Origin: Octopus bimaculoides
Taxonomy: Eukaryota
Direction of reading: 5' to 3'
NCBI RefSeq assembly: GCF_001194135.2
Contig: NC_068986.1
Coordinates: 51,440,297 to 51,504,296 of the forward strand
Length of the DNA: 64,000 nucleotides
Made by a program: the position numbers and the translations under genes. Positions 3,806 through 62,665 of the stretch are shown piece by piece (positions within the stretch are counted from its first letter, which is position 1; each line of letters begins with the position of its first letter). The notes under the pieces were generated by a model, which saw only the letters and a program-made list of their open reading frames with translations, had not been told where the DNA came from and did not search any database.

Positions 3806-3985
3806 CTGATGCATGGTGAAAAGTTGCTAAAGAAAAGTTGCTATCACTTGACTGGTGAATTGGCTGTTTCTCTTTCTCTTTATCTGCATGCATATAACTT
3901 GATGATGGAAAAGTGTCCAGTGCTGTACTTAACCTATCATCAGAGCTGGTTTGAGATATTTTTCGAAAAAAATGAGATATGGTAC
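3806..3985 (-). CDS. NCX: Paralogous cassette exon 3 (180 nt, phase 1 to 1): GTISHFFRKISQTSSDDRLSTALDTFPSSSYMHADKEKEKQPIHQSSDSNFSLATFHHAS
   Basis: tgttctattctag|GT ... TCAG|gtcagt. It lies within ORF 3783..4133 and its N-terminus matches exon 2. Confidence 0.8.
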
Positions 3986-6900
3986 CTAGAATAGAACACA
4001 TGGCATATATTGACACACCAATATCGTTTAGCTCAAGTTTTAACATGAAATAATAGTGCAAGGCTGCTCGTTCCAGGAAAATGTGATGCCATGTATGAAA
4101 AAAGCATTTGAAAATTTTTGGTCTAATAACCAACAGCTACTGATAATTTTCACCTAATGTGAATAGAAATTTTTGAGTAAATACAATTACTAAGGAAAAC
4201 AAGTTTTTAAAAAAAAATATACTAGTTGTTTTTACTTATAACCAAAACATTTATTTAGAGAAACTATTTAAAAAAAGAAATCTTATGAAGTATATAATTG
4301 AAAATTATATATTCATTTTATAAGGATATTTTGAATAGTTATTTGAATATCAGTGTTTGGTGTATATGGAGCAAATTCCTCTAGAATAATATATGCTGGA
4401 AGAATTCAAACAAGAACTAATAGCTTTCACAAAACATAACAAAAGCTTCAGACCATTTTCTAAAGAATTGTCAGCTATCATGCTGTGCTTCACATTAACT
4501 GACTTGATTGATTAATTCAATAAGATTTTGGATAATTCTCAAAAGGTAAGAATAGTGAAAAGAATACTTTTCGTTTTGTTTTGGCTTTTTTTTTTTATAT
4601 AGAGATATGGCAATTGAATTATTTTCAATGCTGTACGAAATAGTTTGCATGACACTGTAGTTTAGCTGGTCACTCATTTCAGAATACTTGGCATCAATAT
4701 TCATTTTTAAGATAGATATATGGAAAAACAGAATATTGAACTCTTAATGATAGTGAAGACGACTGAAACAATACAGGCTTCCATATTATTCTGTTCTCAA
4801 ATATTGGTTTCAAATTTTGGTACAAGGCCAGCAAGTTTGGAGAAGCTCAGTCAATTACATCAACCCCAGGGCTCAAGTGGTACTTATTTTATTGACTCTG
4901 AAATGATGAAAAGCAAAGTCAACTTTGGTTGAATTTGAACTCAGAACACAAAGACTCAGCATTTTGCCCAGCATGCAAACAATTCTTCTATCTTGCCCTT
5001 TTACTGTTCCCAAATACTGTCTTCATCAATGTAAAAGCATTTTTACAACATTCTTTTCTTATACCTAGCTTTGCTAAAACATAATATTACAAAGATCTAG
5101 AACAGTTTGGTTATTTCATTCTTTTTCCCATAATGTCATTTGTTGCAATCTACAAGAATCATAATAGTCTGTGGAAAGTTTCATTTCTAAGCGTGATAGA
5201 TGGCAGAGTTGTCAGGATGTTGGAGAATATACCCTGTGTTAATTAGTTACATCTTTCAATGTTCTGAGTTTGAATCATGTTGGGTTTAAGTATGTTTTCA
5301 TCTTGCCAAGGGTCAACAAAACAAGTACCACTTGGTATACAATCAGTTGTTATCTGCCCACAAAAGTATCAGTGGGACTGACCATTCAACAGATGCCTCT
5401 CATCACCAAAAGATCACTCAACTGGTTATTGATCTGAACCGGAGCATGAAGTCATCATCATTATCGTTTAACGTCCGTTTTCCAAGCTGGCATAGGTTGA
5501 ACGGTCTGACAGAAGCTGGAATCACCAAAGAGCTGTCTAGGCTTCAACTGTCTGTTTTGGCATGATTTCTATGGCTTGATACCCTTCTTAATGCCAACCC
5601 TTTACAGAGCATGCTGGGTATTTTTTACCTGACACCAGCATGAGTGCATCGTACATGGCACTGGCATGAGTGCATTGTATGTGGTACTGGCACAAAACAG
5701 TAATAAACGTAGGTTAGTCAATCATAAAGAACCCCAAAGCAATGATAATTGGGTCATATTTAAAAACTAGCAGACTTGTTATGCCATCAACTAAATATGG
5801 TATACAATCTGACATCTTAATGAAGACAAACCCTACTGTGACCTTAAATAACATTACTTAACTCTGTCACAATCCAACAAGTGTGGTAACTATTGAAGAG
5901 TTTACACATCTACAAACCAACCAAAATGACTCAGTATGAACAACAATGTGATAATTGTATGATTATGTACAACCATAAATGGCATAGATTATAAGTAACT
6001 TAATTCCAAGAGAAAACATTATAGAAATTTTATATCTTATATATCAGACAACACATAAGTTTTGTGATGTCTTCTATATTCTGTCTTAAATTACTTTCCA
6101 CATTTCAAACCAATGGGAGAGCATCTGCACAAATGTTCAACCTACTAGAAACAACAGTCATATTTTCCTCCAACCATACCTTAGCATGTAAGAAAAAAGT
6201 GTGTATGTATGTGTGTGTGTGTGGGGGGGGGCATCACATTAGATAGTATAGTGCTTCGCATACATAAAAGTAGCTGCTGGAACACTAGTTATCATGATCC
6301 TAAATATTTTTTTTTGTACAATAGTTTCCTTTAAGTCTTTTCTTTTGATAGATTCTCTCATTTTAAGGTTTATTTGGCTGTTCACTATGCCAAGAAAGAA
6401 ACCTCTATGTGGTTGCTTGGCCTGCAAAAAATAGCAGCCCAGTCGCTTTCATATCACACATTAGCATTTTTTTAAAGGATGCATTGGTAAAAGCAGTCAT
6501 AGAATTACTGTAACAAAAGAAAAAGAAAGAAATAAAAATTATCGGATGGACGTAGCTGAAAAACTTGTGATCATAGGTCAGCTCACTCAGGAATTATTTA
6601 GAGTTAAAACACCATCACCACCACCACAACCTATACATATATCCATCATAATCAATGACTATGTGGATCAACCAGATGTGTTTCTATGGCAATGTGCAAA
6701 TGGATGGATAAATGCAGACATCTGCCATTATTATCACACATTATATCATTGCTTTGCTTGTAAATTACTACTAATCTACAAAATAGTTGTTAACAGACGA
6801 CAAGAATACACGCTAACTCACACAAACCATTTTGACCTGGAGATGGCAACAAAAGGCATGTTTTTTTTTCTTCTCTTTCCCTGATTTGGATGGTGGGGTG

Positions 6901-7273
6901 GGATGCCCTCTCAGGCTAATTTGTTATCAGATGGCATCAGTGCTCATGCAAAACATAGAAAGCTAAAGTGATATCTATAAATATAAACAGTGTATGTAGT
7001 TTATCAATTAGAAGTAGAGAAATAGAAAGGAGAAGGAAATTAATTGCCAGAAACCAGACTTGTTATATAGACAATTGAAATGAATGTATGTGTGTATGCG
7101 TATGTATACTAAAGTATGTGCACAAGAAAATGAGCAACATGAAAAATTGCAGGCACATATGAGAATAAGTGCTTTATTTGTGTATTAAGGCTACTGTTGG
7201 TTTCATGTTAAGGAAGTCTTCAACAATATTCGAGCCTATCACACAGAACATTGGTGTTTGTTTTCATTTTGGA

Positions 7274-7319
<46 letters not shown>

Positions 7320-7902
7320 CCATAATGCACGATATCCTCTAACACCTACCCTACAATGTCATTCTAAGAATAAAACAATCACATCATCAAAATCTCAAAA
7401 GTACAAGATAATGCATGATAGGCAGAGTAATCTGAGTGCTAAAAGGTTAAGGACTCAAAAGCTTACAGTTGGGATAAGGTAAAATAAGTAAATACCCCCT
7501 TTAGTCATGAATGACCATGGGATTGCACCTAGAAAGTTACCCTCCAAGGCACGAATCTGGGCAAGGTTGTTTATGGAAAAACAGCAATTGCCTATGCATA
7601 CCAGCCTCTCCTCTCCATCCCACCAATATTATCCAAGGGAAAGATGAAAGCTGATACAGCTTGGCACCAGTGACGTCACAACTCATGTCTATGGGTGAGT
7701 GAACTGGAGCAACATGAAATAAAGTGTCCTGCTCAAAAACACAACACACAACCTTGTCCGGGAATTGAACTCACTACTTCATGATTAGAACCTAGTATTT
7801 TATGTTTGCTATGTTTTGTGTCTCTCTGAATACTGAACTGCTGAAGACAATCTAAGGGATTAAATGATGACAGTTATCAGTGCGGCTGGTGCATATTCTG
7901 AC

Positions 7903-8094
7903 CTGACATTCTTTGATGCATGGGGGCAGTATTAGAAGTAGAAGGAGATTTAGGCATTGAAGCCTTTCCGCTAGAGTGTTTATCTTTCTCGGATTCGTTT
8001 TGCATCAAACTGACTTTGGCTGAGTTTAGCGTCTCAATTGTATCCTCAACAAAGCTGCTTTGAGAGATTTTGCGGAAAAGTGTTGACATTGTGC
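7903..8094 (-). CDS. NCX: Paralogous cassette exon 2 (192 nt, phase 1 to 1): GTMSTLFRKISQSSFVEDTIETLNSAKVSLMQNESEKDKHSSGKASMPKSPSTSNTAPMHQRMS
   Basis: ttattattttag|GC ... TCAG|gtcaga. It lies within ORF 7877..8158, shares QRMS|G with exon 1 and shares FRKISQ with exon 3. Confidence 0.8.
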
Positions 8095-12880: not shown

Positions 12881-13848
12881 GTACTACACACTACAGTTTG
12901 TCTTTTGATAGTTTGCTGTATCCATGTCTTCATTAGAAGCAATGTGATGGTATTGTGGAAGATAGACAAGGAACAGAGTTAACAGTTCAGAAGAAAGCAT
13001 TTCTATTACAAATGAATTCTCAAGAAAGTATAGTGGAGCCATAATCCACAAGACAGTGAATACAGGAAGCAAACCCAGTAAGTACTTCTGAAGAGAAGAC
13101 AATGAAGACTAAGATTTAAAACTTATTACGTAGCAGACCACAGAGAATATAGTTGCATTAAATTATTTGTAAATCTGCATGGCATTTGCATGTCAAGCGT
13201 TGGTCTGATATTAACCAGACAAAACTTAGTCAGTGTGAAAGATGATTTCTCTGGTGAATACACACATTTATATATATTTAGACATGGGTGTGGGGTTAAG
13301 AAGTTTGCTTTTTAACTGCATTGCTCCAGGTTCAGCCCCATTGAGTGGCATGTTGGGTAAATGTATCGTACAGTAACTCTGGGCTGATCAAAACTTTGTC
13401 AGTAGATTTGGTAGATGGAAACTGAAAGAAGCCCATCATAAACATAAATACATATTCTTTTACTCTTTTAGTTGTTTCAGTCATTTGACTGCAGCCATGC
13501 TGGAGCACAATCTTATAGGGTCTTTTCTTTAGTCGAAGAAATTGACCCCAAGACTTATTCTTTGTAAGCCTAGTACTTATTCTATTGGGCTCTTTTGCCA
13601 AACTGCTAAGTTACGGGGACATAAAGGCGAACACAGGCATAAAGACTTATTCACATAAATATACACACAGACACACACATATATATGACAGGCTTCTTTC
13701 AATTTCCATCTACCAAATCCACTCACAAGGCTTTGGTCGGCCCAAGGCTATAGTGGAAGACACTTGCCCAAGGTGTAATGCAGTGGGACTGAACCTGGAA
13801 TCATGTGGTTGGGAAGCTAGCTTCTTAACACACAGTCACACCTGTGCC

Positions 13849-13887
<39 letters not shown>

Positions 13888-19214: not shown

Positions 19215-19385
19215 CTGACATACGTTGTCGTATGGGTTCATTGCTTGCAGATGTAGAACTGCCAAAATCCTGTCTTTCAATAAGAGGAATCATATTTGAG
19301 TAGGGTGTCCCAGAATGTACCGAGACATTTGTCTCATCCAGAAAACAGCTGACATCACATTCTTCAAAATAGCGTGATATAGAAC
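19215..19385 (-). CDS. NCX: Paralogous cassette exon 1 (171 nt, phase 1 to 1): GSISRYFEECDVSCFLDETNVSVHSGTPYSNMIPLIERQDFGSSTSASNEPIRQRMS
   Basis: gctatttttag|GT ... TCAG|gtcagt. It lies within ORF 19204..19398 and aligns with the exons at 7903-8094 and 3806-3985. Confidence 0.8.
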
Positions 19386-20494: not shown

Positions 20495-20542
<48 letters not shown>

Positions 20543-22213
20543 AACAATGGTTGTTTTCAAGTGTTACTATTTTTCAGAAGTTTTATTTTTTTTCCATATT
20601 ATTGTACAAGTTCCATCCAGTATACTTTGAATGGTGAAGTTCCAAAATCCATTATCAACATTTCTAATTCCTTCGTGGTCTCCTCTTCAGGATGAAGTAA
20701 TGTTGGTACATGTTACCAATGTGATTAGTGCAGACATTACAAGTGGAATTTGAATTTATACTCCCATTCATCAAGGTATTAATCTAGTAATTCCTGCTCA
20801 TACATGAGCGGGTTAAAGTCAACCTTGACAACATTTGAACCTTGAATTTAAGGAGCTATATTTTTGAACTTCATAACTTGGCTCTTCTGCTGCGCAACAG
20901 ATTTTGCCAGTCTACTACTCTAATTGTACTGTAACCATGTTGGATTAAAAGTTATAAGTGACAAGCAACTGATTATCTTGTAGCTACGAATTGAAGTCTT
21001 GCCAAAGTCACATTCCTGAACAGTTCATAGAATAAGAGCCAGTTTTAGATAGGAACAACTGATAACAAAAGTACAGATGTGCTACGATAGGCACAGGAGT
21101 GGCTGTGTGGTAAAAAGCTTGCTTCCCAACCACATGGTTCCGGGTTCAGTCCTACTGTATGACACCTTGTGCAAGTGTCTTCTACTATAACCCTGGGCTA
21201 ACCAAAGCAATATCAGTGGATGTGGTAGACAGAAACTGAAAGAAGCCCATTGTGTATATGTATATATCTAGGCGTGTGTGCTTTTGTGTCTGTTTTGTAT
21301 CCCCATCACTGCATGACAACCAGTGTTGGTGCGTCTACGTCCCCTTAACTTACTGGTTCAGCAAAAGTGACTGATAAAATAAATACTAGGCTTTAAAAAA
21401 TAAAGTCCTGGGTCAATTTGTTTGACTAAAACACTTCAATGCAGTGCTCCAGCATGGCTGCAGTCAAATGATTGAAACAAGTAAAAGAATAAAAGAATAA
21501 GTAAACTATATCTAAGGTCAATTTTGCCACCTAAAAGCTCCAATTAGATATCAGTGGTCAGTTACAGCTAACCACTGATATTTGACAGGAAATAACAGAA
21601 ACTGATCAAACAAGAAATAACACCCAGTGTGCATCCATGTCAGGTCAAGAGTAATTTAATCACAGGCTGATAGAAACCTGCTACTGGCAACCATGTATCT
21701 CACACCCTGTCACTTATGATGAAGGCTCCAGTTGATCTGACCAATGGAACAGCTTGCTTGTGAGATTAATGTGCAAGTGGCTGAGCACACTACAGACACC
21801 CATACTTCTCAGGGAGATTCAGCATGACACAGTGTGTGGCAAGTCTGGCCCCTTGAAATACAGGTATTACTCATTTTTTGCCAGCTGAGTGGACTGGAGC
21901 ACCTGAAATAAAGTGTCTTGCACAAGGACACAATGCGCCACCAGAAATCAAACTCGTGACCTTATGATCGTGAGCTGAATACCCTAATGACTAAACCACG
22001 TGCCTTCACAAGCCACACGCAACCATGTACTCCCACACTATTGGTTTTTTGTGGTGCAGTGGTCAGAGACTAAACCAGCCCCCTATTGAACTTGCCCAGT
22101 GAGGAACAAGGATAGACACTCAGCAGGATTAAGAAATAAAACCTGTGGAAAGAAAATGAATGTTTTGAGAACCAACAACGTCCATATTCTAGAGAGGAGA
22201 TGGGTGCTACTAG

Positions 22214-28733: not shown

Positions 28734-28838
28734 CTGGAGAAAAATTGTCAATGGTTAAAGAGACTTGATATAAGAAATCTTGACAAGATTCTAAAATTCT
28801 TATTGCCTGCTCTTCTTCATCTATTTTTAGTTTTAACT
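28734..28838 (-). CDS. NCX: 105-nt symmetric cassette exon, phase 1 to 1: ELKLKIDEEEQAIRILESCQDFLYQVSLTIDNFSP
   Basis: gttattttag|AG ... CCAG|gtttgt. The frame is open and protein-like. It is absent from the ORF track because no start codon opens a 60-aa ORF in this frame. Confidence 0.75.
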
Positions 28839-31782: not shown

Positions 31783-31803
31783 CTGAGTGGGCAGATTCAG
31801 TAT
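31783..31803 (-). CDS. NCX: 21-nt symmetric microexon, phase 1 to 1: DTESAHS
   Basis: Long U-rich tract ttttgaattgtttatgctttgtttttatag|ATACTGAATCTGCCCACTCAG|gtaaat. It is open in the phase left by the CBD2 exon. Confidence 0.65.
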
Positions 31804-38381: not shown

Positions 38382-41300
38382 AAGATCATGTAAATATGAA
38401 ACATACTAACATGTCTTTATACTAATGCTTTTACATTTTATTTTTCCTTTTGTCTTGATCAATATCCATTTTCCTATGCTAAATTGACAAAGTAGATTTT
38501 AGAAAGTTAGACATTCACTTATGAATAGTTGAAACAATTGATTTTACAACAAGATACCATTCTTACTTCCAAACACTCAAACCAGAGAGAGATACAACTA
38601 AGCACATCTAGGAGTCCATTAGGGTTGATAGGGTGTCAACAGACCAGCGGGTGAACACAGTACAAGGCATTGGTAAAGTTTCAGCTCATGAAAATGGGCT
38701 TACAATGATGAGGTGAAGAGCAATTAACAGACATGTGGTCCTGAATTCAATTACAATGTAGGGGAAGTGCTCTTAACAGTAGCCTTGGGCGGACTAATGC
38801 CTTGTGGGTGAAATTTGGTGGATAGAAACAATGTGGAAGACCTTTGTATGTAACTCTTTCTGATGCTAGCTAGCTGTCTATCTAAAGTTTGTTCTGTTTG
38901 GGTTACTTCCCTTTGTGTCTAGTTAAGTTGACTTCAACTTTCCTTACCATATGAAGGCAAGAAAACAAGAATCAGGCAAAGGAGTGAGTCAATATTGTAT
39001 GATAAAACCTTACTACAGCAGGGCTGCAAGACTGAAGCCAGTAAAAGAATAAAGAAAAAACAAAGACTATTTGGTATTCAGTCCAAAGTGGAAGTTGATT
39101 TCAGATGCCAACAAGCATATGTATATTTTTTATCTTTTACTTGTTTCAGTCATTAGACTGTGGCCATACTGGAGCACTGTCTTAAAGAATTTTTAGCTGA
39201 ATGAATTTACCCCAGTACTTTTTTATAAAGCCTTGTACTTATTTTATTGATATCTTTTGCTGAACCTCTAAGTTTTGGAGATGTAAACACTGGTTGCCAA
39301 ATAGTAGTGGGGAACAAACACAGACACAAACACACACATATATACAACAGTATATATGTGTGGTTTTAAGTTTCTGTCTACCAGATCCACCCACAAAGGC
39401 TTTGGTTGGCCCAATTCTATAGCAGAAGACACTTGCCCAAGCTGCCACACAGTGGGACTGACCCCAGAACCATGTGGTCGGGAAGCACGCTTCATACCAT
39501 ACAGTCACACCTTCAACCTGCCCATACCTGCGCCTATATACATGTATGTATGTATGTTGGTATGTATATGTATGTATGTTGGTATGTATATGTATGTATA
39601 TTATCATCATTTTAATGTTCAATATTTCATGCTTGCATAGGTTGGACAAAGTTTATTGAAACAAATTTTCTATGGTTGGATACCCTTCCCACTGCCAACC
39701 TTCAACTGTTTCCAAGCAAGATAATATTTTCCCCATAACCAGATATATTTTCACAAAAGACTGGAAATGAAGAACACTGCTTTTTTGATAGTGACATTCA
39801 TTTACAACCATGTCATGTCAAGACACACACAAACACACAATATATACTATGGGCTTTCAATTTCTATCAACTAAATTCACTCATTAGGCATTGAGTGATA
39901 AGGGTCTATAGTAGAAGACACTCGCCCAAGGTTCTCTGCAGTGGAACTGAACCTGAAACCAAGTGGTTGCAAAGTGAGCTTCTTAACCACACAGCCACAC
40001 CTGCATCTAGTCATATATATATATATATATATATANNNNNNNNNNNNNNNNNNNNNNNNNNNNNNNNNNNNNNNNNNNNNNNNNNNNNNNNNNNNNNNNN
40101 NNNNNNNNNNNNNNNNNNNNNNNNNNNNNNNNNNNNNNNNNNNNNNNNNNNNNNNNNNNNNNNNNNNNNNNNNNNNNNNNNNNNNNNNNNNNNNNNNNNN
40201 NNNNNNNNNNNNNNNNNNNNNNNNNNNNNNNNNNNNNNNNNNNNNNNNNNNNNNNNNNNNNNNNNNNNNNNNNNNNNNNNNNNNNNNNNNNNNNNNNNNN
40301 NNNNNNNNNNNNNNNNNACTTAAAAACATATATATATAGGCTTGGCATCATCTGAATATATTAGACACCATTTCAATTATAAACACAAGAGGTACAAGTA
40401 TGTCAGGGCCTCTTTGCTCTGCTGAAGGTTTACTTGATGTACTACTAAGGAGTGTCGGCAAAATAAATTTACAAACATTAATTTGTACAGACAGTCCAAA
40501 AAGTAATTGGTTTAATCTGGGTATTATATACAAAATGTTGAACATAATCATAAAAATCATAAAACATTAAATTTCTCCATATGTCTTTATACTATCATTT
40601 ATTGTTGTAGTCAGGCAAGGAAAGAGAAAGAAAAAAAAAAGAACCAGATATGATTGTTTGTAGAAATTATAAATATTTAAGAATGCAAGCACCTGAATGT
40701 ATGCAAGATTTAGAACGCTGAATTATGATGAATAAGCAAACAAGCAGCAGCCCAAAAAACAATGGAGGAACAACACACAGAAAGATATGAAAGAGAAAGA
40801 AGCTTTCACAGATAAAAATGGTAATGATGACAAGTATAACTGGAAGAAAGCCAAAAGGGTGTTAGGAAAAGAAAAGAAACCCAGCAAAAGAGAATAACAT
40901 CCATTATGAAGAGATTCGGGTGTAAATTAGAAAGAAACAAAAACTAATAAAAAAATTTCATTGCATAAGGTAAAGTTTGGCAAGAACACACGAGTGCCAG
41001 CAAAAGAGCTGTCTAAAATATCACCAAGCTAAATTTACTTATGTAGACAGGTGTTAAAATAATACATAGTTCACTACAGAATATAATGAGTAGTTAGCCC
41101 TCGTGGTTGCCTGGAATGTAATCTAATTGAATTGTTGAGCTAGTAGGACATGAATTAATAAAAAACAAAAAGTAGAGTTCTAGATAGATTTCTAGATAGA
41201 ATGTTTTACTATATTTCTTTTTGTCCACTCCAATCTGAATTCATGTTCTGACAGAGTTTATTTTGCAATTTATCTCTTTAGGTTCAATAAATACCAGATA

Positions 41301-42877
41301 AGACTGAGTCAATTCAGCCAGCCATACCAGCCATACCATTCTCCTTCAAAATTTAGTCTAACCAACCAAATTTTGAATCTGACAGGCTTTTAAAGGAGAA
41401 TTAAGAGTAAATGTTAGATTGCATAACTTTTCAATTAGAGAGTTATCAAAAATATCTGTGGAAAAAATATATCACATTTATAGATTAGAATTATGTTGCA
41501 TCCATGAGAGAGTCTCTGTGTGATTGTGTAACTTACTAGAAATAGCAGACAAATATGCAACAAATCACACTCTTTTCTTAAACACAGAGAAAGGACACAT
41601 TGAAAATAATGTAGTCTTATAGTAATCTAAAAATTATAGGATCATAGGTGTACATTAAAAACTACTTGAAGGCTTTGGAAAATCTAAACTTGAGGAAATA
41701 TAAGTACTTTGCGACTACCATCCAAAGAGTATACCAGAGAAAGAAGGGACAGAACTCAAATCTATTTTGTGCTGTCAGAACTCATTTCCAAATATTTTGT
41801 TTTTCATCTACTTATGTTACTAGGAGATATAGTGTGCTAGAGCCTATATAAGTTTCCATAGAAACAGTGATATATGTCTATTGTTGGACAGCATACTAAT
41901 ATGTTGTAGGTATTGCTCACGAGAGAATTTGAATTTCATGTAGTAAGCTAAATTTTACTTCCTCTATCTACTTCTTTCACTCTATAAAAACTTCAATAAG
42001 TCAAATTTTTCATAGACACTGAAGATTCACTGGGCCAGTGCTTAATTCTGGCTCCAAATCAATCTCAATCTACGCGAGCCCAATTTATTACTGGTAGTAT
42101 GGAAGATTTCTGATGAGAGACTCTGAACTCTGTATGACACCAACAAAGTAATTCTAAAGTGCTGTCACTTGCTCATCACAGTCATAGAGAAAATCTTGTG
42201 AAGTTTATGGTAAATACAGCAGGCTGCCCTGGATTGTGAAGAGCCACATTATACAACTCTAATGACAACTTACAAGCTGCAAAATGCCTCACTTCCTTGT
42301 CCAGTTCGTTAACTATCTACTAGTTATTTACTTATAACTTGGTGATGTGAGTATCCTTAACTGGCAAGTTTCTTTATTATGGTAATGATATTAAGAACTG
42401 TCAACTTGTAGGCCAATTGACAGAGAACCCATATAACTTAACTTTCTGTGACATGATCGAATGAAGAAATCTTCAAGTGGTCACTTAACATGGCAAGCCA
42501 CTAGATCTTCCACGAAACACACACGACTCTAATAAAATATCACATTGGATACTATAGACTTGGGTACACTCTTGCTGACAAAAAGGTGTGATGTACATAA
42601 CTTGAATGCTTTTGATCATAAGTCAACTTAATGATACTCTACTTGGAAACTAAGCAATAACAACAGTTATTGTTATGTTTTATGAATTTATAGGCACAGG
42701 AATGGCTGTGTGGTAAGTAGCTTGCTTAACAACCACATGGTTCCAGGTTCAGTCCCACTGCGTGGCATCTTGGGCAAGTGTCTTCTACTATAACCTTGGG
42801 CCCACCAAAGCCTTGTGAGTGGATTTGGTAGACAGAAACTGAAATAAGTCTGTTGTATATATAAATATCTGAATATG

Positions 42878-45524: not shown

Positions 45525-45734
45525 ATACCTTACTCTTTTACTTGTTTCAGTCATTTGACTGTGGCCATGCTGGAGCACCGCCTTTAGTCGATCAAATCGC
45601 CCCCAGGACTTATTCTTTGGAAGCCTAGTACTTATTCTATCGGTCTCTTTTTGCCGAACTGCTAAGTTATGGGGACATAAACACACCAGCATCAGTTGTC
45701 AAGCGATGTTGGGGGGACAAACAGACACACAAAT

Positions 45735-45785
<51 letters not shown>

Positions 45786-45935
45786 ACGGGCTTCTTTCAG
45801 TTTCTGTCTACCAAATCCACTCACAAGGCTTTAGTCAGCCCGAGGCTATAGTAGAAGACACTTGCCCAAGGTGCCACGCAGTGGGACTGAACCCGGAACC
45901 ATGTGGTTGGTAAGCAAGCTACTTACCACACAGCC
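45525..45935 (-). mobile_element. Abundant ~400-bp SINE with an internal (TA)/(TG) microsatellite (family S1), representative copy
   Basis: Similar copies at about 21090-21500, 42692-43138 and 50227-50630 (+) and 13455-13848, 39128-39515, 48660-49005, 50805-51190 and 57405-57785 (-). Confidence 0.9.
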
Positions 45936-46669
45936 AGAACACCAAAAATAATTTGGGATGAAAATAAAAATTTAACAATTGGAAATGACATACATCAAAT
46001 AAATCATAAGTCCATATTCACCATTTTTCTAAACTATGTTACTTAAGATTTTGGTCATAAAGGGACATTCTGGTCACCGACTAACACCTAGATGTTGTTC
46101 TTAGCACCAGTTTAATTATAATTATTGTCTCAGTTTCATAAACATTAACTTTTAAGAGTTGTGTGATGATAAAACTAAAAAGAAGTAACTCTAAGACTGC
46201 TGCTTCATTACATAATCCTAACAACAAATGTAGAAGAAAAAAACATACAAAGAAACAAATATAACTGTCAAAACCCAGAATCTCTTTGAAAGCTCCCTCA
46301 CGTTCAGACATCCTATCTTATGAAACAAAATTCATTAGCGTCTATTTATACATATACACTATTGTGTGTATAAGCATACATACTTATATATTTACATGCA
46401 TAAATTTACACTCGTACACACACACACATATATATATACAGATCATGAGAATAATGATCTATCTATATATATATATATATATATAAATATATATATCATT
46501 ATCATCATGAAGAGGTCTGGAAGGTTCTGTCAAAATGTCCATATGTGGCACCAATAAAAAGCTAGCTACTAACCTACCCACATTTTTTCTTTTTACTTTT
46601 TATTTTTATCACTTTTTTTTTCCTTCTTGTAATCTAATAGGATGTAGAAAACTACAACATATCTGTTAC

Positions 46670-46844: not shown

Positions 46845-46906
<62 letters not shown>

Positions 46907-48524: not shown

Positions 48525-48569
<45 letters not shown>

Positions 48570-49005
48570 CATCATTTAACAGCTGCCTTCCAGGCTGGCA
48601 TGGGTGGGACACTATATATATACACACACACATACATACTTGTGTATCTATATATATCTTTTGTCTTTTACTTGTTTTAGTCATTAAACTGTGGCCATGC
48701 TAGGACACCACCTTAAAGAACTTTTAGTTGAACAAATCAACCCCAGTACTTTTATTTAAGATTGGTGCTTATTCTATTGGTCTCTGTTGCTGAACTGTAC
48801 ATAAACATGCCAACACTGATTGTTAGGTGATGGTGGGACACAAACACATGACAAGCTTCCTTCAGTTTCCATCAACCAAATCCACTCACAAGGCTGTGGT
48901 TGACCCAAAGCTATAGCAGAAGACACTTGCCCAAGATGCTATGCAGAAGGACTGAACTGAATGTCAAGTGGTTGGGAAGCAAACTTCCTACCACACAGCC
49001 ATGAC

Positions 49006-49036
<31 letters not shown>

Positions 49037-52000
49037 ATCACATAGGGAGAAGGAGAGAGAGAGATACATATATAAGAGTGTGTCGGTGTGAACAACTAAA
49101 AAAAATCTAGGATGGAAAATAAATGCTTTGCTTCACTGTTTTCATTTTCAATAAAAGTAACAATTCAAAAAAATGGAACATTGGGTGAAAATTGGAAGTA
49201 TGATGAATACTTATGTCTAGCAAGAGAAAATAAACTTGACTGTTGCTTCATAAAGAAACAAGTTAAGTCAGTAGCAATTATATTCTTGAATTTATTCTTC
49301 AATACACAAAAGTTTAACAATTTTATTTCTCTTTTTCGTTTTTCTTTGGAAACTACACTGATAGAGTTATTTCCCTTTACAAACAGCTAAAAATTGAGTG
49401 AAGTTGGGGGGAGGTTAATCATATTTGTCACAGATGATATGGTAGAAATAGGGAAGAACTAGATTGAATGATCTGCAGTGTGGCTGTGCAGTTAAGAAGT
49501 CTGCTTCCCAATCACATAGTTTTGGGTTCAGTCTCACCGCGTGGTACCTTGGGCTAGTGTCTTCTACTATTACTCCAGCCTCATTAAAGCCTTGTGAATG
49601 AATACAATCGATAGAAACTAAATGATGTGTGTGTGTGAGTATGATTTTGAAGATGTGATTGTTTATTTTTACAATGACATTGTACAGGAGGTGTGAGAAG
49701 CTAGACATGACCGGTTGTAACACGAATCAGGTAGAATATTTGGGCTGGACATGGCTGGTTTAAATGCTAAGGAGTTAACCTAAGCCATTTGAGTGAAAAT
49801 CGAAAGACAGAAACTATGTGGAAGCCTGTCTTTTTATGTTGTTATTGGGTGTTTGATTTATTCTTCATCTAGTTAACACCATCACTTTTTCTTTGAGTGC
49901 CTTTACCAGAGTAATCTGTGGCTAATTATTGGAGTTAGGTGTCCAATCTGAGTACAATTTCTGCTTGCTTTGCTCCCATCAGTGACAAAAGTTCTGTAAA
50001 GAAACTTTTCCTTTCTGACTAAATTATATGAAACAGATAGAAAGAAAGGAAGAAAGAAGAAAAGGAGAATCTGAAGAAATTTTTCAAGAATTTTTATTTC
50101 TTCATTAAATAAGAGATTCTGTCAAAATATAAATAACCAGATAAGCCATGTCAATGAAGTAGATTTACTTCCAAAAATAAAGAAAAATAATTACATGTCC
50201 CCCTTAAAATTTTCATTCTATTGTTGCAGGCATGGTTGTGTGGTAATAAAGCTTGCTTCACAGCACATGGTTCTGGGTTCTGTCCCACTGTGTGGCATTT
50301 TGGACAACTATCTTTTACTATAGCCACAGGCTAACTAAAGCCTGTGAGTGGATTTCGTGGACGGAAATTGAAAGAAGCCCATCATGTGTGTGTGTATATT
50401 ATATATGTATATATATATTTATGTGAGTGTTCCACCACCACTTGACAACCGGTGTTGGTATGTTTACATCCCCTGCAATTTAGCAGTTCAGCAAAAGAGA
50501 CTGATAGAATAAGTACAAGTTTAAAAAAAAAAAAAGTCCTGGGCTTGATTTGATTAACTAAAACTCTCAAAGGCAATGCCCCAACATGGCCACAGCCAAA
50601 TGACTGAAACAAGTAAAAGATAAAAGATAGATACAATATGTTCACGACAATGTAGAATAGGTTCTCCCTTTTTATGAGTTGGTCTAATTATTAAACATCA
50701 AAGAGGTCAACAAATTATCTAATATTCTTCAACGCTGTTTAAATCCAATATAATCTTTGTTGGGTGGAATGCCAACATCTTAGTCATCAAATCTTCATTT
50801 TATCTTTTATCTTTTACTTGTTTCAGTCATTAGACTGCGGCCATGCTGGATGCACTGTCTTCATTAAATTTTAGTTGAACGAATCAACCTCAATACTTAT
50901 TCCTTTTAAATCTGGTACTTTTTCTTTAGGACACTTTTGTGAAACTGCTAAGTTATAGGGACGTGAACACATCAACAGCAGTTATCAAGCAGTAATGGGA
51001 GACAAACAACACACATACACAAACACATAAGATGGGCTTCTTTCAGTTTACGTCTACCAAATCCACTTGCAAAGCTTTGATCAGGCTGAGACTATAGTAG
51101 GAAAAATTTGCCCAATTTTGCCATGCAGTGGGACTGAACCTGGAACCATGTTGCTGGGAAGCCACTTTCTTACCACACAGCTATGCCTGCATCTTGTTTA
51201 GGGTTGTTCTTTTTTTGTTTTTTTCTTCCCAGTGCATGCAACTGTACTGAGATGTAGTAAAGCTGTTATCAAAACTAGAACTTGTTTAATTACGGCTAAA
51301 AAACAAAACAAAACAGAAAACAAAGAAATAAACAAAATAAGAATGAATAGGAGAGGGAGAAGGCAAAGGACAAAATGAGCAGAAACAACAGGTGTAAGCA
51401 ACATACAAGGTGATCAAGAAGAAGAAGAAATAAGAGAAACTTTGTATATAAATAAATAAACAGAAAAAATAAGATACTAACATCAAACAATTGTGTCCAA
51501 AAGTACATGATTTCTCACAGACATTTATACATGAACAACACAAGAATTCCAAGATACATGAAAATAATAAAAAGCGAATAAATCTTCATGTCAAAATCAG
51601 GCACATTTCTTAAAGATTTTTCACGAGTAGTTTCCAAAATAAACTACTTTACTTAAAATTCATTTAGCCTCTAGCCTTCTCTGCTGTAATGCTTCCTGTG
51701 CAAGGCAGCATAATGCTTATTAATATAATTCTCATTCAGAAACACTCTTAAAAGCATTTCACAATAAATCTATTTCTTTGGCATTAATCCCTGATTTTAG
51801 ATATTTTCATAAAATTTTTTTACTTTAAATTTATGTTGTATAAATGTGTTTGCCACCCTTAAATGGCATTTTAGAAATCTTTACTACTTTTCACCCAACT
51901 GAGACTCAAATGGCTAAAAATATAAAAGAATATGGCTAAGGTTTCTAGAATATTTAGAATATAACTCAAAGTGTCAATTATTATTCATGCCATTTCATTC

Positions 52001-55000: not shown

Positions 55001-56386
55001 TTTTTTTGGTTTGTCTTTTCAATAGTTACTTTAAATGAAAATAAATATAACCCACTAAGTCTTGACATCACTTTGGAAGATGCAGAGGGGCTGGTATGAG
55101 AATGCCAGTGATGGAGAGCACTGGTTGGCTCTATGTATGATAATGCTTCTGGGATCACTAACTTGGAATGACCCCAGCCGAGTCAAGCCAACCCACTAAT
55201 TATGTTTATGAAAACAGATCATATGAGCGCATTGTTTATTGGGCAACCAAGATTTTCTTTTTTACAACTATATGCAGCAAAGTTTAAACTGTGTGCCTAT
55301 AATATTCTGTAGTACTGCACCATTTAAGAAAGGGGGTATGTTATGAAAAAAAGCAGAAAACAACCTATTTGGACTTTCTTGGCACCAATTTAAAAAAAAA
55401 AAAAACTAAACTACTCAATGTAATACAGCAGACTTCTCTATAAATCTCAAAGTGAAATGTTTTAAGTTTCAAAAGTGATTACATAGATATGAAGATTACA
55501 ACCTATTAGTGTTGAAACAGAAATTCTGTACGCTACAGCTGAGAGGATAATATTTCTCTCTGATATTTCCCAAGAAGTAAATATTTTTCTCATTGGGTTT
55601 TTGATGAAGTAAATTTAGAAATTGGATAATTGTGTTGGAGGGTGGGGGGAGGGAGTTAAAACTGAGATGTGAAGTAGAGAAATTTAGATATTAAACAATG
55701 TGAGAAGATAACTACAAGCAAATGTAAAAATGTTTTAAATTAAAATTTCTTTTATAGAAACGTGTGTGTATGTGTATGTATGCAATAATGATGACAGTTT
55801 TCATTTCAGTATTCAGTCCCAAAAGATAAAAAAAAAGCCCCCAAAAACTGCATGTCAAGTGTCAGAATAATGTGGAAGAAACTAGACTTCAAAAGGTAAA
55901 CCAGACTATAACAACAAGAAGACCATTTAAATCCTTACTGCAGACAAGATATGACTGGTGTCCAAATTTTAGTAGACTTAGAGGGTAATGAACCTCTTCA
56001 ATCATGAATGACCATGGGATTGCACCTAGAAAGTCCCTCTCCAAAGCACAAGTCTGGGCAAAGTTGTTTATGGAAGACCAGCAGTTGCCCATGCACACTA
56101 GCCTTCCCTCTTTCGTGCCACTGATGTTATCCAAGGGAAAAGTAAAAGCTGATTCAGCTTGGCATCAGTGACATTCATTTCTACAGCTGAGTAGACTGGA
56201 GCAACATGAAATAAAGTGTTTTGCCCAAGAACACAACACACAGCCTGGTCTGGGAATCGAACTCACTACCTCATGATTGTGAGCCTGACGCTCTAACTAC
56301 TGAGTCATGTGCCTTAGTTCAGTTTAAATTTTGTATGATGAATGTGTAATGCATGTTACAATGTGTATGTGAGTGTGTATGTATGC

Positions 56387-56434
<48 letters not shown>

Positions 56435-56872: not shown

Positions 56873-56883
56873 CTCCAAACCTG
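56873..56883 (-). CDS. NCX: Candidate microexon, 8 or 11 nt (NAGNAG acceptor), phase 1 to 0: (A)GLE
   Basis: tctttctttttggttctcatcag|CAG|GTTTGGAG|gtaagg. Both splice sites are strong. The frame is restored only together with 35616-35637. Confidence 0.45.
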
Positions 56884-57849
56884 CTGATGAGAACCAAAAA
56901 GAAAGATTCAAAATCCCATGATACTCAACACAAGTATTCATCATCATTTACTCTCTCTTTTTCCCATGCCGGCATGGGTGGGACAGTTTGACAAGAACAG
57001 ATGGGCCACATGGCATGGTTTCTCCAGCTAGATTTTGCCTTTCCTAATAATACCAATCACTTAAAAGAGTGTACTGGGTGCTTTTTATGTGACACCAGCA
57101 CTGGTGAGATCACCAAGTACCTGCAACTGAGCAGGGTGCACAGTGGAGGAATAAGAAACTATGAAAGAGGGAGAGGAGCAGGTGACTTGCTGAAGATACA
57201 AAGCCAGAAAGTGAGAGAGAGAGAGAAAAAGAAAGAGATGTGAAGTCTAGGTACAACATGAATATGTGACATGATAGGATAGAAGAGGGGAAAAGATGGA
57301 AGTGAAGTGCACTGAGTGAAAATAGCATGATGGATGATTAGAGATAGGGAAAGAGTTGGATGTAGAGAATATCAGATCAGTGTAAGGAGAAGTGAAGATA
57401 TATACTCTTTTACTCTTTTACTTGTTTCAGTCATTTGACTGCAGCCATGCTGGAGCACCGCCTTTAGTTGAGAAAATCGACCCCAGAACTTATTCTTTGT
57501 AAGCCTAGTACTTATTCTATCGGTCTCTTTTGCCGAACTGCTAAGTTACAGGGACGTAAACACACCAGTATCGGTTGTCAAGTGATGTTGGGGGGACAAA
57601 CACAGACACACAAACACACATATATACGACGGGCTTCTTTCAGTTTCTGTCTACCAAATCCACTGACAAGGCTTTGGTTGGCCCGAGGCTATAGTAGAAG
57701 ACACTTGCCCAAGGTGTCACGCAGTGGGACTGAACCCGGAACCATGTGGTTGGTAAGCAAGTTACTTACCACACAGCCATTCCTGTATATATATCATTAA
57801 CATCATTATTAATCATATGATAATAATGAATAATAATTTGTAATTTGAT

Positions 57850-59459: not shown

Positions 59460-59491
<32 letters not shown>

Positions 59492-59624
59492 CTTTATTTA
59501 AAAGCAACAGAAATATAACAAAAGCTGTTACTCAGAGTTTCACATTCCTGTTCGGCGGACAGTTTTGTTAACGTGAAACTCTGAGTAACAGCTTTTGCTA
59601 TATTTCTGCTGCTTTTAAATAAAG
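59492..59624. repeat. 52-bp fold-back inverted repeat, probably Penelope pseudo-LTR type
   Basis: Arms at 59492-59543 and 59573-59624 with 2 mismatches. A partial second copy lies at about 60280-60405. Confidence 0.9.
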
Positions 59625-60566
59625 CATATTACTCTACCTCTGGTATTTGAGTACTCTTTTTTCCACCTTGTTTCACATTTATGTGCTTACTCCGGTATAT
59701 ATATATATATATATATGAAAGATATAAATGACAAAGGAACAAGAAATTATGTAATGAACATTGCTAGATTACAGCTGTTTCTACTATAAGATGAAATGTA
59801 TTCATAGTTGAGTACTTGCATATCACTTTATAACTTTGTTGGTCTTCATAAATGAAGAGTTTTAACAGAAACAACTGTAAGCTACTAAAATTCATTACGT
59901 AATTTCTTATTCACTTATTTACATAAACTCTTATTCCACTCTGTTCTCAACTAATGCTTTACTCCTGAAGCATACATACATTGAGTTATTGGTAGCACTA
60001 TGCCTAAGTGAAATATTGGTTTAAAATGCTGGTACAGGGCCAGAAATTTCTGGGGACAGGCTAAGTAAATTACATTAACCCCAATGCTCAACTGGTACTT
60101 ATTTCATTGAATCTGAAAGGATGAAAAGCAAGTCAACCTTGGCAGAATTAGAACACGGAATGTAAAGATGGACAAAATGCTGTTAGGCATTTTGCCTGGT
60201 GTGCTAATGATTCTGCCATTTCACTGTCTTAACTAAGTGAAATATATATATACATTTATATACATATAAATGTATATACCAAAGTAAGCACATGAATGCG
60301 AAACAAGATGGAAAAAATAGTACTTGAATACCAGAGATAGAGTTATGGCAAAGTGAAACTCTGAGTAACAGTTTTTGTGATATTTTTGCTGCTTGTTAAT
60401 AAAGTATAAATGTGTATATATATATATATGTGTGTCTGTGTGTGTGTATATACTTGTATATGAGTGTGTATATTCTTTTTATTCTTCTATTAGTTTCAGT
60501 TATTTGACTGTGGCCATGCTGAAGCACAGCCTTTAGTTCAGCAAATCAACCCTGGGATTTATTCTG

Positions 60567-60651
60567 CATGAGGTGGATGTAGGTGTCTTCAAAATGAAAC
60601 TCGACCTCTTACTGTCAAATGTCCCAGATGAACCAACTCCACAGCAGGAAG
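60567..60651 (+). mobile_element. LINE ORF2 3'-terminal fragment
   Basis: [26 protein letters not shown] resembles the FK..LD..L..VPD.P C-terminus of CR1/L2-group LINEs. Confidence 0.6.
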
Positions 60652-61414
60652 ATATATATAAATAGATAATATATGAATATATATATATATATATAAATAT
60701 ATATAAATATGTATATAAATATATATGTATATAAATATATATATATAAATATGTATATAAATATATATATATAAATATGTATATAAATATATATATATAA
60801 ATATGTATATATATATATATATATAAATATGTATATATATATATANNNNNNNNNNNNNNNNNNNNNNNNNNNNNNNNNNNNNNNNNNNNNNNNNNNNNNN
60901 NNNNNNNNNNNNNNNNNNNNNNNNNNNNNNNNNNNNNNNNNNNNNNNNNNNNNNNNNNNNNNNNNNNNNNNNNNNNNNNNNNNNNNNNNNNNNNNNNNNN
61001 NNNNNNNNNNNNNNNNNNNNNNNNNNNNNNNNNNNNNNNNNNNNNNNNNNNNNNNNNNNNNNNNNNNNNNNNNNNNNNNNNNNNNNNNNNNNNNNNNNNN
61101 NNNNNNNNNNNNNNNNNNNNNNNNNNNNNNNNNNNNNNNNNNNNNNNNNNNNNNNNNNNNNNNNNNNNNNNNNNNNNNNNNNNNNNNNNNNNNNNNNNNN
61201 NNNNNNNNNNNNNNNNNNNNNNNNNNNNNNNNNNNNNNNNNNNNNNNNNNNNNNNNNNNNNNNNNNNNNNNNNNNNNNNNNNNNNNNNNNNNNNNNNNNN
61301 NNNNNNNNNNNNNNNNNNNNNNNNNNNNNNNNNNNNNNNNNNNNNNNNNNNNNNNNNNNNNNNNNNNNNNNNNNNNNNNNNNNNNNNNNNNNNNNNNNNN
61401 NNNNNNNNNNNNNN

Positions 61415-61456
<42 letters not shown>

Positions 61457-62564
61457 ATATATATATTGTGTGTGTGTGTGTGTGTGTGTTTCCCTTTGTG
61501 TTCATCTGTATTGTAGTGTCATTCATTTCCAATCATCCATGAAAATATGTCTAGCTAAGGGGATAACTGACATGGAAACAAGTAAGGGTTGATGACACTG
61601 AGGGCATCTAGCTGTAGAAAATCTACCCACCTCAATGAATTCTATCTGACTCACATGAATATAGAAAAGTGAATGCTAAAATGATGATGATGATGAAATG
61701 ATATTTGTAGGAATGACTGTTGATACAGACTTCCCTTCATACCCACAAGGTTTAGGGTTCTATTTCACCATATGGCACTCTCAGCAAGTGCCTTGGACTG
61801 ACGAATGTCTTAAGTGGAACTGGCAAATGGGAGCTATACAAAGGCCTGTTGATTTACATTGTATGTCTCCGCATTACACTGTTTGAGCAAAATCATCATG
61901 TTATGTCAACATTCTCTGTAAATTATACATCGTGTGGTACACTGCTTTCAAAGACCAATAAAATAAAATTAAAATGTTCTAACTTGAAAAACTAGCAAGC
62001 ATTGGGGGAAAAAAGGGTATCAGGCTATAAAATGTTGTCTCAGGAGGTCTTTGTTCAACCCATGCCAGATGGGGTTATTGAACTGTGGTCATGCTGGAGC
62101 ATCACCTTGAGAAAAAAGTTGCAGGAAAGTTATTATGAGACTTGAACTTGTACCCCTCAGACACTGGCTGAGTGCTCTAACCATTAAACTAAACAGCCTC
62201 TGTACATGTAAGAAACAACATTACAGGACATTAAAAACTCACAAATGATGAGATAAAGTTTATAGGTATTCAAATAACTATGAAAACCAATGAATCAAAT
62301 ATTTGGTGATTGTTTTCAACTTCCTCCTCCGGCACCCCAACAAAAAGCAGGAGGAAAAAGAAGCAAAAAACAAAGTAAAGACACAATAGAAATATATTCA
62401 AGTAAAGATTGTTGATAAATTATGATAGCTATGATGATACTTTGGAAAAAGAATCAAACAATACAAGTTGAATAATAATGAAGAAATTGATCTAATACTT
62501 GAAAATTTACCAGGATTATCATCTTCATTATTATTCATTTAAAGTTTAATTTTTTTTTACTAAC

Positions 62565-62665
62565 CTGCTGGTTTCTTCACAAGGAAAGGTTCATCTAGCC
62601 AAATGAAAAAAGTTTCATTCTTTTCATATTCTTCATCATCAAATACCCGTACGCGAAGAAATTTT
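62565..62665 (-). CDS. NCX: Na+/Ca2+ exchanger internal exon (101 nt, phase 2 to 1), Ca-binding domain 2 (Calx-beta): KFLRVRVFDDEEYEKNETFFIWLDEPFLVKKPA
   Basis: Acceptor tcttctttcttgcag and donor CAG|GTTAGT. The translation carries the DDEEYEKN.TF motif of NCX1 exon A (KTISVKVIDDEEYEKNKTFF) and is close to squid NCX-SQ1 as I recall it (DDEEYEKNETFFIWLDEPYLVKKP). The ORF track (62595..62816) shows a different frame. Confidence 0.95.

What the first reader, a model, noticed from the sequence alone, without database searches (positions are those of the whole stretch)
3806..62665. Greatly expanded alternative-exon array in the CBD2 F-G loop of a cephalopod Na+/Ca2+ exchanger
Seen: after the CBD2 exon (ends in phase 1) I found no constitutive NCX exon in ~62 kb. 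There are instead at least six frame-preserving units: 8+22, 21, 105, 171, 192 and 180 nt, about 233 aa if all were included, plus a possible 36/42-nt exon. Established: vertebrate NCX1 places its short cassette exons C-F (about 40 aa in total) at this point, and splicing here tunes Ca2+ and Na+ regulation. As I recall it, the cloned squid neuronal NCX-SQ1 has a short loop here, consistent with an all-skipped isoform. Inference: this lineage independently built a much larger combinatorial cassette at the same hotspot. That gives 64 in-frame combinations if the six units are independent, or 32 if the three paralogs are mutually exclusive or skipped.
Basis: partly seen in the sequence, partly recalled or inferred. 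Interest (0 to 1): 0.92.

Follow-up and report, generated by a model that had tools for sequence, protein, structure and literature searches.

The report
Octopus sodium-calcium exchanger extra loop exons
This stretch of the Octopus bimaculoides sodium/calcium exchanger gene holds four optional coding exons, already in RefSeq predicted isoforms, that can add about 188 floppy, serine-rich residues to a calcium-sensing domain, at the spot where vertebrates splice in about 40.

Summary
The core observation is real, but smaller and less combinatorial than claimed. The window is part of the Octopus bimaculoides NCX gene on the minus strand.

- **Constitutive exon.** The CBD2 exon (62665..62565, 101 nt, exits in phase 1) is the only constitutive NCX exon present.
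- **Optional exons.** Four phase-1/phase-1 exons lie downstream: a 21-nt microexon (31803..31783, DTESAHS) and three paralogous exons of 171, 192 and 180 nt (19385..19215, 8094..7903, 3985..3806).
- **Annotation.** All four are in RefSeq predicted isoforms. O. bimaculoides X1 and O. sinensis X1/X2 include all four. Other isoforms include only the microexon, or none.
- **Conservation.** The microexon also occurs in a decapodiform transcript. The three large exons were seen only in Octopus.
- **Position.** The exons sit between strands F and G of CBD2. This makes the loop 199 aa, against 56 aa in human NCX1.1, and the insert is predicted disordered.
- **Not supported.** The figures of 233 aa and 64 or 32 combinations are unsupported, and strict mutual exclusion is contradicted.
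- **Gaps.** All five assembly gaps are intronic simple repeats.

It is a new variant of a known splicing hotspot. It is annotated by computer but I found no paper describing it.

The parts
62565..62665 (-). Constitutive CBD2 exon. It is the homologue of vertebrate NCX1 exon A/B, is 101 nt long, enters in phase 2 and exits in phase 1. It encodes strands E-F and the DDEEYEKN Ca2+-site region.
   Evidence: sequence and splice sites. (homology to NCX1). (the same 101-nt exon with the same boundaries in a distant cephalopod contig, L001, 84% nt identity). (100% match to O. bimaculoides XP_052824690.1 residues 581-613).
31783..31803 (-). 21-nt alternative microexon (ATACTGAATCTGCCCACTCAG) adding DTESAHS. 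It is phase 1 in and phase 1 out.
   Evidence: tttttatag| acceptor, |gtaaatgt donor; present in O. bimaculoides X1/X2, in O. sinensis X1-X4 (as DTDSAHS) and in the decapodiform Logan transcript P0016 (DTDSTHS). Absent from O. bimaculoides X3, O. sinensis X5/X6 and squid NCX-SQ1.
19215..19385 (-). 171-nt cassette exon, paralogue 1 (57 aa, GSISRYFEEC...IRQRMS). Phase 1 in and phase 1 out.
   Evidence: In O. bimaculoides X1 and O. sinensis X1/X2. 93% aa identity between the two species.
7903..8094 (-). 192-nt cassette exon, paralogue 2 (64 aa, GTMSTLFRKISQ...HQRMS). Phase 1 in and phase 1 out.
   Evidence: In O. bimaculoides X1 and O. sinensis X1/X2. 95% aa identity between species.
3806..3985 (-). 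180-nt cassette exon, paralogue 3 (60 aa, GTISHFFRKISQ...FHHAS). Phase 1 in and phase 1 out.
   Evidence: In O. bimaculoides X1 and O. sinensis X1/X2. 95% aa identity with one in-frame one-residue indel.
3783..3805 (-). Intron bases read through by the O. bimaculoides X1 model (G-QFKVKF-stop). This is the truncated end of a gene model, not a conserved coding feature.
   Evidence: O. sinensis X1 instead splices the 180-nt exon to the next constitutive exon (GSSSENVQQ...), which is not in the window.
28734..28838 (-). Unsupported.
   Evidence: one of 32 chance 105-nt units, with unexceptional splice scores. Absent from every annotated isoform. No Pfam match.

Best explanation
**What it is.** The window is the intron-rich middle of the single Octopus bimaculoides NCX (SLC8-type Na+/Ca2+ exchanger) gene. 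After the constitutive CBD2 exon come four real, optional coding exons. One is an old 21-nt microexon shared with decapodiform cephalopods. The other three are large exons (171, 192 and 180 nt) that arose by tandem exon duplication and have so far been seen only in Octopus.

**Splicing.** All four are symmetric (phase 1 to phase 1), so inclusion or skipping keeps the frame. Annotated transcripts skip all four, include the microexon only, or include all four together.

**Effect on the protein.** Inclusion puts 188 residues between beta-strands F and G of the second Ca2+-binding domain, the same loop that vertebrate NCX1 varies with exons C-F.

**Likely function (inferred, not shown).**
- The insert is an intrinsically disordered, serine-rich segment: Ser 21%, two RKIS sites of protein kinase A (PKA) type and two RMS motifs.
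- Like the vertebrate cassette, it probably tunes Ca2+ activation and Na+-dependent inactivation.
- It may add phosphorylation-dependent control in the tissues that include it.
For: **Annotation**
- The exhaustive protein search returned XP_052824690.1, 'sodium/calcium exchanger 3 isoform X1 [Octopus bimaculoides]'. It is 100% identical over the CBD2 exon plus all three large exons, with 7 extra residues that are the microexon.
- O. sinensis X1/X2 (1092/1091 aa) carry the same four exons joined to the complete C-terminal half. X3/X4 carry only the microexon, and X5/X6 carry none.

**Splice sites and paralogy**
- Every exon has a canonical AG/GT boundary and the same phase.
- The three large exons are paralogues, and their shared donor CAG|GTCAG and shared intron flank show it.

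**Conservation**
- O. bimaculoides and O. sinensis are 94.5% identical in the three large exons (171/181, one in-frame indel), against 97.2% in the N-terminal 580 aa.
- Between paralogues ex192 and ex180, the first 14 codons differ at 0.68 of synonymous sites but only 0.17 of non-synonymous sites. The peptide motif (FRKISQ) was kept while silent sites saturated.

**Position and structure**
- The insert lies between NCX1 residues 608 and 665 of chain 8sgi_A.
- The Pfam Calx-beta match is interrupted at profile position 104 of 119.
- In the AlphaFold2 model, strands A-F have pLDDT 81-96, the insert 35-51 with almost no secondary structure (one four-residue helix), and strand G 77-96.

**Skipped form and composition**
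- The all-skipped form equals cloned squid NCX-SQ1.
Against: - No RNA reads could be examined here. Support for splicing rests on RefSeq computer-predicted models. That such alternative isoforms need transcript support is my own knowledge of the NCBI pipeline, not something I tested.
- The O. bimaculoides X1 model ends by reading into the intron after the 180-nt exon. In this species the junction to the next constitutive exon is therefore not annotated.
- No protein from a sequencing-run (Logan) assembly carrying the insert turned up, although the word-index search proved erratic.
- In the collection searched, the record for the Argonauta hians gene holds an 898-aa product, which by the tool's description is that gene's longest product. 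Its annotation therefore appears to have no long form.
- Neutral divergence between the two Octopus species could not be measured, so 94.5% identity is not a formal test of selection.
- Low pLDDT in the insert partly reflects the lack of aligned homologues.
- The proposed regulatory and phosphorylation role is inference only.
Confidence: 0.8

Rival explanations
1. Free combinatorial or mutually exclusive use. Six or more units would be chosen independently (64 isoforms), or the three paralogues would be used one at a time (32).
For: All supported units are symmetric, so any combination keeps the frame. The three large exons are paralogues, as mutually exclusive exons usually are. Their acceptors score lower than the constitutive exon on my crude score (0.2-0.9 against 6.8).
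Against: - The annotated isoforms of two species include the three paralogues together or not at all. This contradicts strict mutual exclusion.
- The 105, 8+22 and 36/42 units are absent from all isoforms and match chance expectation.
- Intron lengths of 3.9-12 kb give no steric constraint.
- I did not make a systematic search for competing docking/selector RNA pairings. A single 10-nt motif shared downstream of two donors has one plus-strand copy.
Confidence: 0.12
2. The three large exons are splicing noise or annotation artefacts. They would be rarely used cryptic exons with no protein-level function, giving truncated or degraded transcripts.
For: The O. bimaculoides X1 model is truncated in the intron after the 180-nt exon. 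RT-PCR in squid nervous tissue found no variants. No independent transcript-derived protein with the insert was found.
Against: - All three reading frames are open with the same phase in two species, at 93-95% aa identity, and the only indel is in frame.
- Paralogues keep the FRKISQ and QRMS motifs despite saturated silent sites.
- The O. sinensis X1/X2 models join the exons to a complete exchanger.
Confidence: 0.08
3. The exon-like units belong to a separate gene nested in the NCX intron, or are exonised copies of a repeat family.
For: The intron is large and full of SINE-like repeats and microsatellites.
Against: - The units have the same strand and phase as the NCX exon and are joined to NCX exons in RefSeq proteins.
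- tblastn finds only these three copies in the window.
- None overlaps the repeat families listed in the part of the repeat output I could see, which is the 20 largest of 40 families.
Confidence: 0.01

Closest known systems
Vertebrate NCX1 (SLC8A1) alternative splicing region: mutually exclusive exons A/B followed by cassette exons C-F
   Same: Same gene family and same position. The optional exons follow the exon A/B homologue and lengthen the CBD2 F-G loop (described in PMC2217150 and PMC2408596). As I recall, the vertebrate cassette exons are also frame-preserving.
   Different: The octopus large exons are 57-64 aa each, against 6-23 aa as I recall for exons C-F. They are paralogues of each other and show no sequence similarity to exons C-F. 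Together they give a 199-aa loop against 56 aa. No second A/B-type exon is in the window. Annotated use is all together rather than combinatorial.
Squid NCX-SQ1 (Doryteuthis opalescens, UniProt O02196; He et al. 1998, PMC2217150)
   Same: Orthologous gene. It is 83% identical to the octopus protein by BLASTP over 73% of P0002. The same exon A homologue is joined directly to GSSSGSVVE..., which is the all-skipped form.
   Different: No insert. RT-PCR of nine clones from optic lobe and stellate ganglion found no other isoform. Octopus annotations add up to 188 aa.
Drosophila CALX isoforms 1.1 and 1.2 (PDB 3RB5 and 3RB7)
   Same: An invertebrate NCX. Both CALX entries were hit. That the two isoforms differ by alternative splicing in the CBD2 region, and that this changes Ca2+ regulation, is my own knowledge.
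   Different: As I recall, the CALX isoforms differ by only five residues. They are not a large disordered insert and not paralogous exons.
F-G loop variation in other molluscs and lophotrochozoans (RefSeq and Logan NCX proteins)
   Same: The same loop varies in length, is acidic and serine-rich, and carries DTDSA-like motifs resembling the octopus microexon (for example P0029, GSDTDSANS).
   Different: By the wider-anchor measure, loop length is 30-83 aa in the 38 non-Octopus sequences sampled (36-44 aa in the two short O. sinensis isoforms), against 226 aa in the octopus long form. None shows the three-exon repeat.

Membership tests
NCX / SLC8 Na+/Ca2+ exchanger, second Calx-beta domain (CBD2) | Sequence match to the Calx-beta domain and to CBD2 of solved NCX structures | tested here: met
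   Pfam PF03160 scores E 1.2e-58 on O. sinensis X1, with a stretch ending exactly at the window's exon. The PDB search hits NCX1 8sgi_A at E 3e-50 and also the CBD2 entries 2FWU and 2QVM.
NCX / SLC8 Na+/Ca2+ exchanger, second Calx-beta domain (CBD2) | Belongs to a protein with the two Na_Ca_ex membrane repeats | tested here: met
   PF01699 and PF16494 match O. sinensis X1, which contains all window exons. The membrane repeats themselves lie outside the window.
Alternative cassette exons | Canonical splice sites, and a length and phase that keep the frame whether included or skipped | tested here: met
   All four exons have AG/GT boundaries, lengths of 21, 171, 192 and 180 nt, and phase 1 in and out.
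Alternative cassette exons | Present in some mature transcripts and absent from others of the same gene | tested here: inconclusive
   Met at the level of RefSeq predicted isoforms in two species. No RNA reads or cDNA clones could be examined with these tools.
Alternative cassette exons | Coding-type conservation in related species | tested here: met
   The large exons are 93-95% identical at the aa level between O. bimaculoides and O. sinensis, with frames kept. The microexon is kept in a decapodiform transcript. Paralogue pN 0.17 against pS 0.68 over the shared motif. Formal dN/dS between species was not possible because no orthologous DNA was available.
Mutually exclusive exon cluster (as NCX1 A/B or Dscam-type) | Paralogous exons in tandem | tested here: met
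Mutually exclusive exon cluster (as NCX1 A/B or Dscam-type) | Exactly one paralogue per transcript | tested here: not met
   O. bimaculoides X1 and O. sinensis X1/X2 contain all three in series.
Homologues of vertebrate NCX1 cassette exons C-F | Sequence similarity to exons C-F | tested here: not met
   tblastn of the NCX1 region that includes exons C-F finds nothing in the window beyond the exon A homologue.

The most novel reading that the evidence does not exclude
Octopus evolved a lineage-specific regulatory module by tripling one exon. The result is a 181-aa disordered insert in the CBD2 F-G loop. Its repeated RKIS and RMS serines would act as a multi-site, kinase-driven switch (for example cAMP/PKA) on Ca2+ activation or Na+-dependent inactivation, used in particular tissues. 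This would be a mode of NCX control not found in vertebrates or squid.
Probability: 0.2. Interest if true: 0.6.

Novelty: new variant of a known kind. Interest (0 to 1): 0.4.

Why it matters
Splicing at the CBD2 F-G loop is the main way vertebrates make tissue-specific NCX1 variants with different Ca2+ and Na+ regulation. Squid NCX is a classic physiological model in which only the short form is known.

A much longer, repeat-built and probably phosphorylatable loop in octopus would show three things:
- The same hotspot has been elaborated separately in another lineage with complex excitable tissues.
- It offers a natural test of how loop length and charge affect CBD2 function.
- It may be relevant to the ATP- and phosphorylation-dependent regulation reported for cephalopod exchangers.

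The practical point is more modest. The exons are already in RefSeq predictions, and what is missing is experimental description.

Tried and rejected
- **Word-index searches.** A search with the concatenated exon peptides returned only a genomic ORF from a distant cephalopod and missed the octopus proteins. The third search was similarly patchy. Their negative results are therefore weak. The exhaustive representative search is what found the annotated protein.
- **Orthologous DNA.** All attempts failed. The O. sinensis, Argonauta and O. bimaculoides genes span 293-316 kb and no DNA was returned. O. sinensis X3 and the two Sepia pharaonis models are not on record. So I could not compare exons with introns, compute between-species dN/dS, or test whether the large exons exist outside Octopus.
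- **The 105, 8+22 and 36/42 units.** I list the likeliest 105-nt candidate (28838..28734) as unsupported.
- **Second exon A/B-type exon.** None found in the window.
- **Docking/selector element.** The motif ATAACTGTCA, shared downstream of two donors, has one plus-strand copy. I did not look systematically for pairing partners.
- **Rbfox-type GCATG sites.** They are not enriched near the exons.
- **Pfam.** No domain found in the insert.
- **Literature.** Three successful searches found no description of long cephalopod NCX isoforms.

Full report
**Layout of the window**

The window is 64 kb, AT-rich and full of microsatellites and SINE-like repeats. It has five N runs.

On the minus strand at 62665..62565 there is a 101-nt exon with a cttgcag| acceptor and a |gttagt donor. 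It encodes KFLRVRVFDDEEYEKNETFFIWLDEPFLVKKPA plus the first base of a Gly codon, so it exits in phase 1.

This is the homologue of vertebrate NCX1 exon A/B:
- The same 101-nt exon with identical boundaries is found on a 2.5-kb contig of a distant cephalopod, where only the exon is conserved (84% nt identity).

**Finding the claimed units**

I scanned the minus strand for AG..open frame..GT units in the required phase. This turned up two related peptides, GTMSTLFRKISQ... (8094..7903, 192 nt) and GTISHFFRKISQ... (3985..3806, 180 nt). tblastn with these found a third relative at 19385..19215 (171 nt).

All three have canonical splice sites, the same donor CAG|GTCAG and the same phase. DNA and protein alignments show that they are paralogues. 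The similarity is concentrated at the acceptor, the first ~15 codons, the last codons and the start of the downstream intron.

**Identity**

The exhaustive search of 1.84 billion representative proteins with the concatenated peptides returned an 808-aa protein that is 100% identical over the whole query. It is XP_052824690.1, 'sodium/calcium exchanger 3 isoform X1 [Octopus bimaculoides]', on a 117-Mb contig of GCA_001194135.2. The window is therefore part of the O. bimaculoides NCX gene, whose range is 315 kb.

The protein reads CBD2 exon | DTESAHS | 171 | 192 | 180 and then runs into the intron (GQFKVKF-stop). The seven extra residues are a 21-nt microexon at 31803..31783, with a tttttatag| acceptor and a |gtaaatgt donor.

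**Isoforms in the databases**

| Species | Isoform | Exons after the CBD2 exon |
|---|---|---|
| O. bimaculoides | X1 | microexon + 171 + 192 + 180, then read-through |
| O. bimaculoides | X2 | microexon, then GSSSENVQQEEDDPVLVELGKPRRG... |
| O. bimaculoides | X3 | none |
| O. sinensis | X1/X2 (1092/1091 aa) | all four, joined to a complete C-terminal half |
| O. sinensis | X3/X4 | microexon only |
| O. sinensis | X5/X6 | none |
| Decapodiform (Logan transcript P0016) | – | microexon, as DTDSTHS |
| Squid NCX-SQ1 (O02196), a second decapodiform transcript (P0017), Sepia pharaonis models | – | none |

- For Argonauta hians, the collection's record for the gene holds an 898-aa product, which the tool describes as the gene's longest. 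No long form appears to be annotated there.
- tblastn of the O. bimaculoides and O. sinensis proteins against the window hits only the CBD2 exon and the three large exons. The microexon is too short to be detected. No other constitutive exon lies in the window, and no annotated residue is unaccounted for.

**Assembly gaps**

All five N runs lie within introns, between the exons listed, and are flanked by poly-A or (TA)n. They interrupt no exon, and frame continuity across them is not an issue for the supported exons. An unannotated exon hidden in a gap cannot be excluded, but the longest annotated O. sinensis isoform needs none.

**The unsupported units**

Chance easily supplies them:
- Downstream of the CBD2 exon there are 3,282 frame-preserving AG..open..GT units, including 32 of 105 nt, 172 of 21 nt, 107 of 36 nt and 73 of 42 nt.
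- The first intron has 104 AG-8nt-GT and 96 AG-22nt-GT units.
Its splice scores are unexceptional and it has no database support.

The supported insert is therefore 7+57+64+60 = 188 aa, not 233.

**Position in the protein**

- Against the human NCX1 structure chain 8sgi_A, the octopus sequence aligns up to ...EPRLVE (residue 608) and resumes at SKEEEERRIAEMGRP... (residue 665). The same anchors are 56 aa apart in NCX1.1 and 199 aa apart in the octopus long form.
- Pfam Calx-beta matches up to profile position 104 of 119 at the end of the window's exon.
- An AlphaFold2 model with a 41-sequence alignment gives pLDDT 81-96 for strands A-F. Residues 101-300 have pLDDT 35-51 and almost no secondary structure (a single four-residue helix). 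Strand G has pLDDT 77-96. The insert has no aligned homologues, which by itself lowers confidence there.
- By a different measure with wider anchors (WLDEP to LGKPR.G), the loop is 30-83 aa in the 38 non-Octopus lophotrochozoan NCX sequences sampled and 36-44 aa in the two short O. sinensis isoforms, against 226 aa in the octopus long form.

**Evidence that the exons code for something**

- Between O. bimaculoides and O. sinensis the three large exons are 94.5% identical (171/181, one in-frame indel). The N-terminal 580 aa are 97.2% identical and the next constitutive exon is 74/74 identical.
- Between paralogues ex192 and ex180, the first 14 codons differ at 0.68 of synonymous sites but 0.17 of non-synonymous sites. 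The FRKISQ motif has been held while silent sites saturated. The sample is small.
- The insert has no Pfam domain. It is 21% Ser and contains two RKIS motifs (protein kinase A type) and two RMS motifs at exon ends.

**Interpretation**

The best explanation is a set of genuine optional exons at the known NCX splicing hotspot: an old microexon plus an Octopus-specific triplicated exon encoding a disordered, serine-rich loop extension.

That it modulates Ca2+ and Na+ regulation, possibly through phosphorylation, is inference from the role of the vertebrate cassette and from the motifs. Nothing here tests it.

The annotated patterns contradict strict mutual exclusion and give no support for free combinatorial use. 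The weaker acceptors of the large exons fit regulated inclusion, but my splice score is crude.

**Limits**

- I could not see any RNA reads.
- The statement that RefSeq alternative isoforms rest on transcript alignments is my own knowledge of the NCBI pipeline.
- The O. bimaculoides X1 model is truncated in the intron after the 180-nt exon. The nearest AATAAA is about 400 nt downstream, at 3398.
- Orthologous genomic DNA could not be fetched.

**Novelty**

Three literature searches found nothing on long cephalopod NCX isoforms. The isoforms do exist as computer predictions in RefSeq. This is a new variant of a well-known kind of splicing.

Noticed in passing
window 62124-62199, minus strand: A tRNA-Thr(AGT)-like sequence lies in the intron about 370 nt downstream of the CBD2 exon (ARAGORN; Rfam tRNA 33.1 bits against a 29-bit threshold). 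The low score suggests a pseudogene or the head of a tRNA-derived SINE rather than a working gene.
   Followed up: partly
window 13273-13850, 21087-21265, 39396-39516, 42690-42870, 45530-45945, 48768-49010, 51009-51192, 57410-57790 and others: Several families of SINE-like interspersed repeats (100-230 nt, 65-93% identical) and very many (TA)n, (TG)n and (TATG)n microsatellites fill the introns. Their translations give many long spurious open frames.
   Followed up: no
window 19400, minus strand: A TGCATG (Rbfox-type) motif lies 15 nt upstream of the 171-nt exon inside its pyrimidine tract, and another lies inside the 180-nt exon at 3891. GCATG is not enriched overall, at 0.9 per kb.
   Followed up: partly
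window 62565-62571 (the CBD2 exon donor, CCAGCAG|gttagt), compared with O. sinensis X4/X6: O. sinensis isoforms X4 and X6 lack the Ala at the end of this exon (KKP|D.. and KKP|G.. instead of KKPA|..). That implies a donor 3 nt upstream, but in the O. bimaculoides sequence that position is not followed by GT. I could not explain this without O. sinensis DNA.
   Followed up: no
O. bimaculoides RefSeq models (P0129, P0131, P0130), outside the window: All four O. bimaculoides isoforms are truncated. X2 and X3 end in ...AITVNAAEKSNAEDKKEKGFLITTRSLK, and X4 ends before the CBD2 exon. They lack the C-terminal membrane half that O. sinensis models have, which suggests an assembly or annotation break downstream in this species.
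   Followed up: no
window 7540-7770 and 56101-56262, minus strand: Two copies of another repeat give similar long open frames (VQFPDKVVCCVFEQDTLFHVAPVHS... and VRFPDQAVCCVLGQNTLFHVAPVYS...). One lies just downstream of the 192-nt exon. It is not part of the NCX coding sequence.
   Followed up: no
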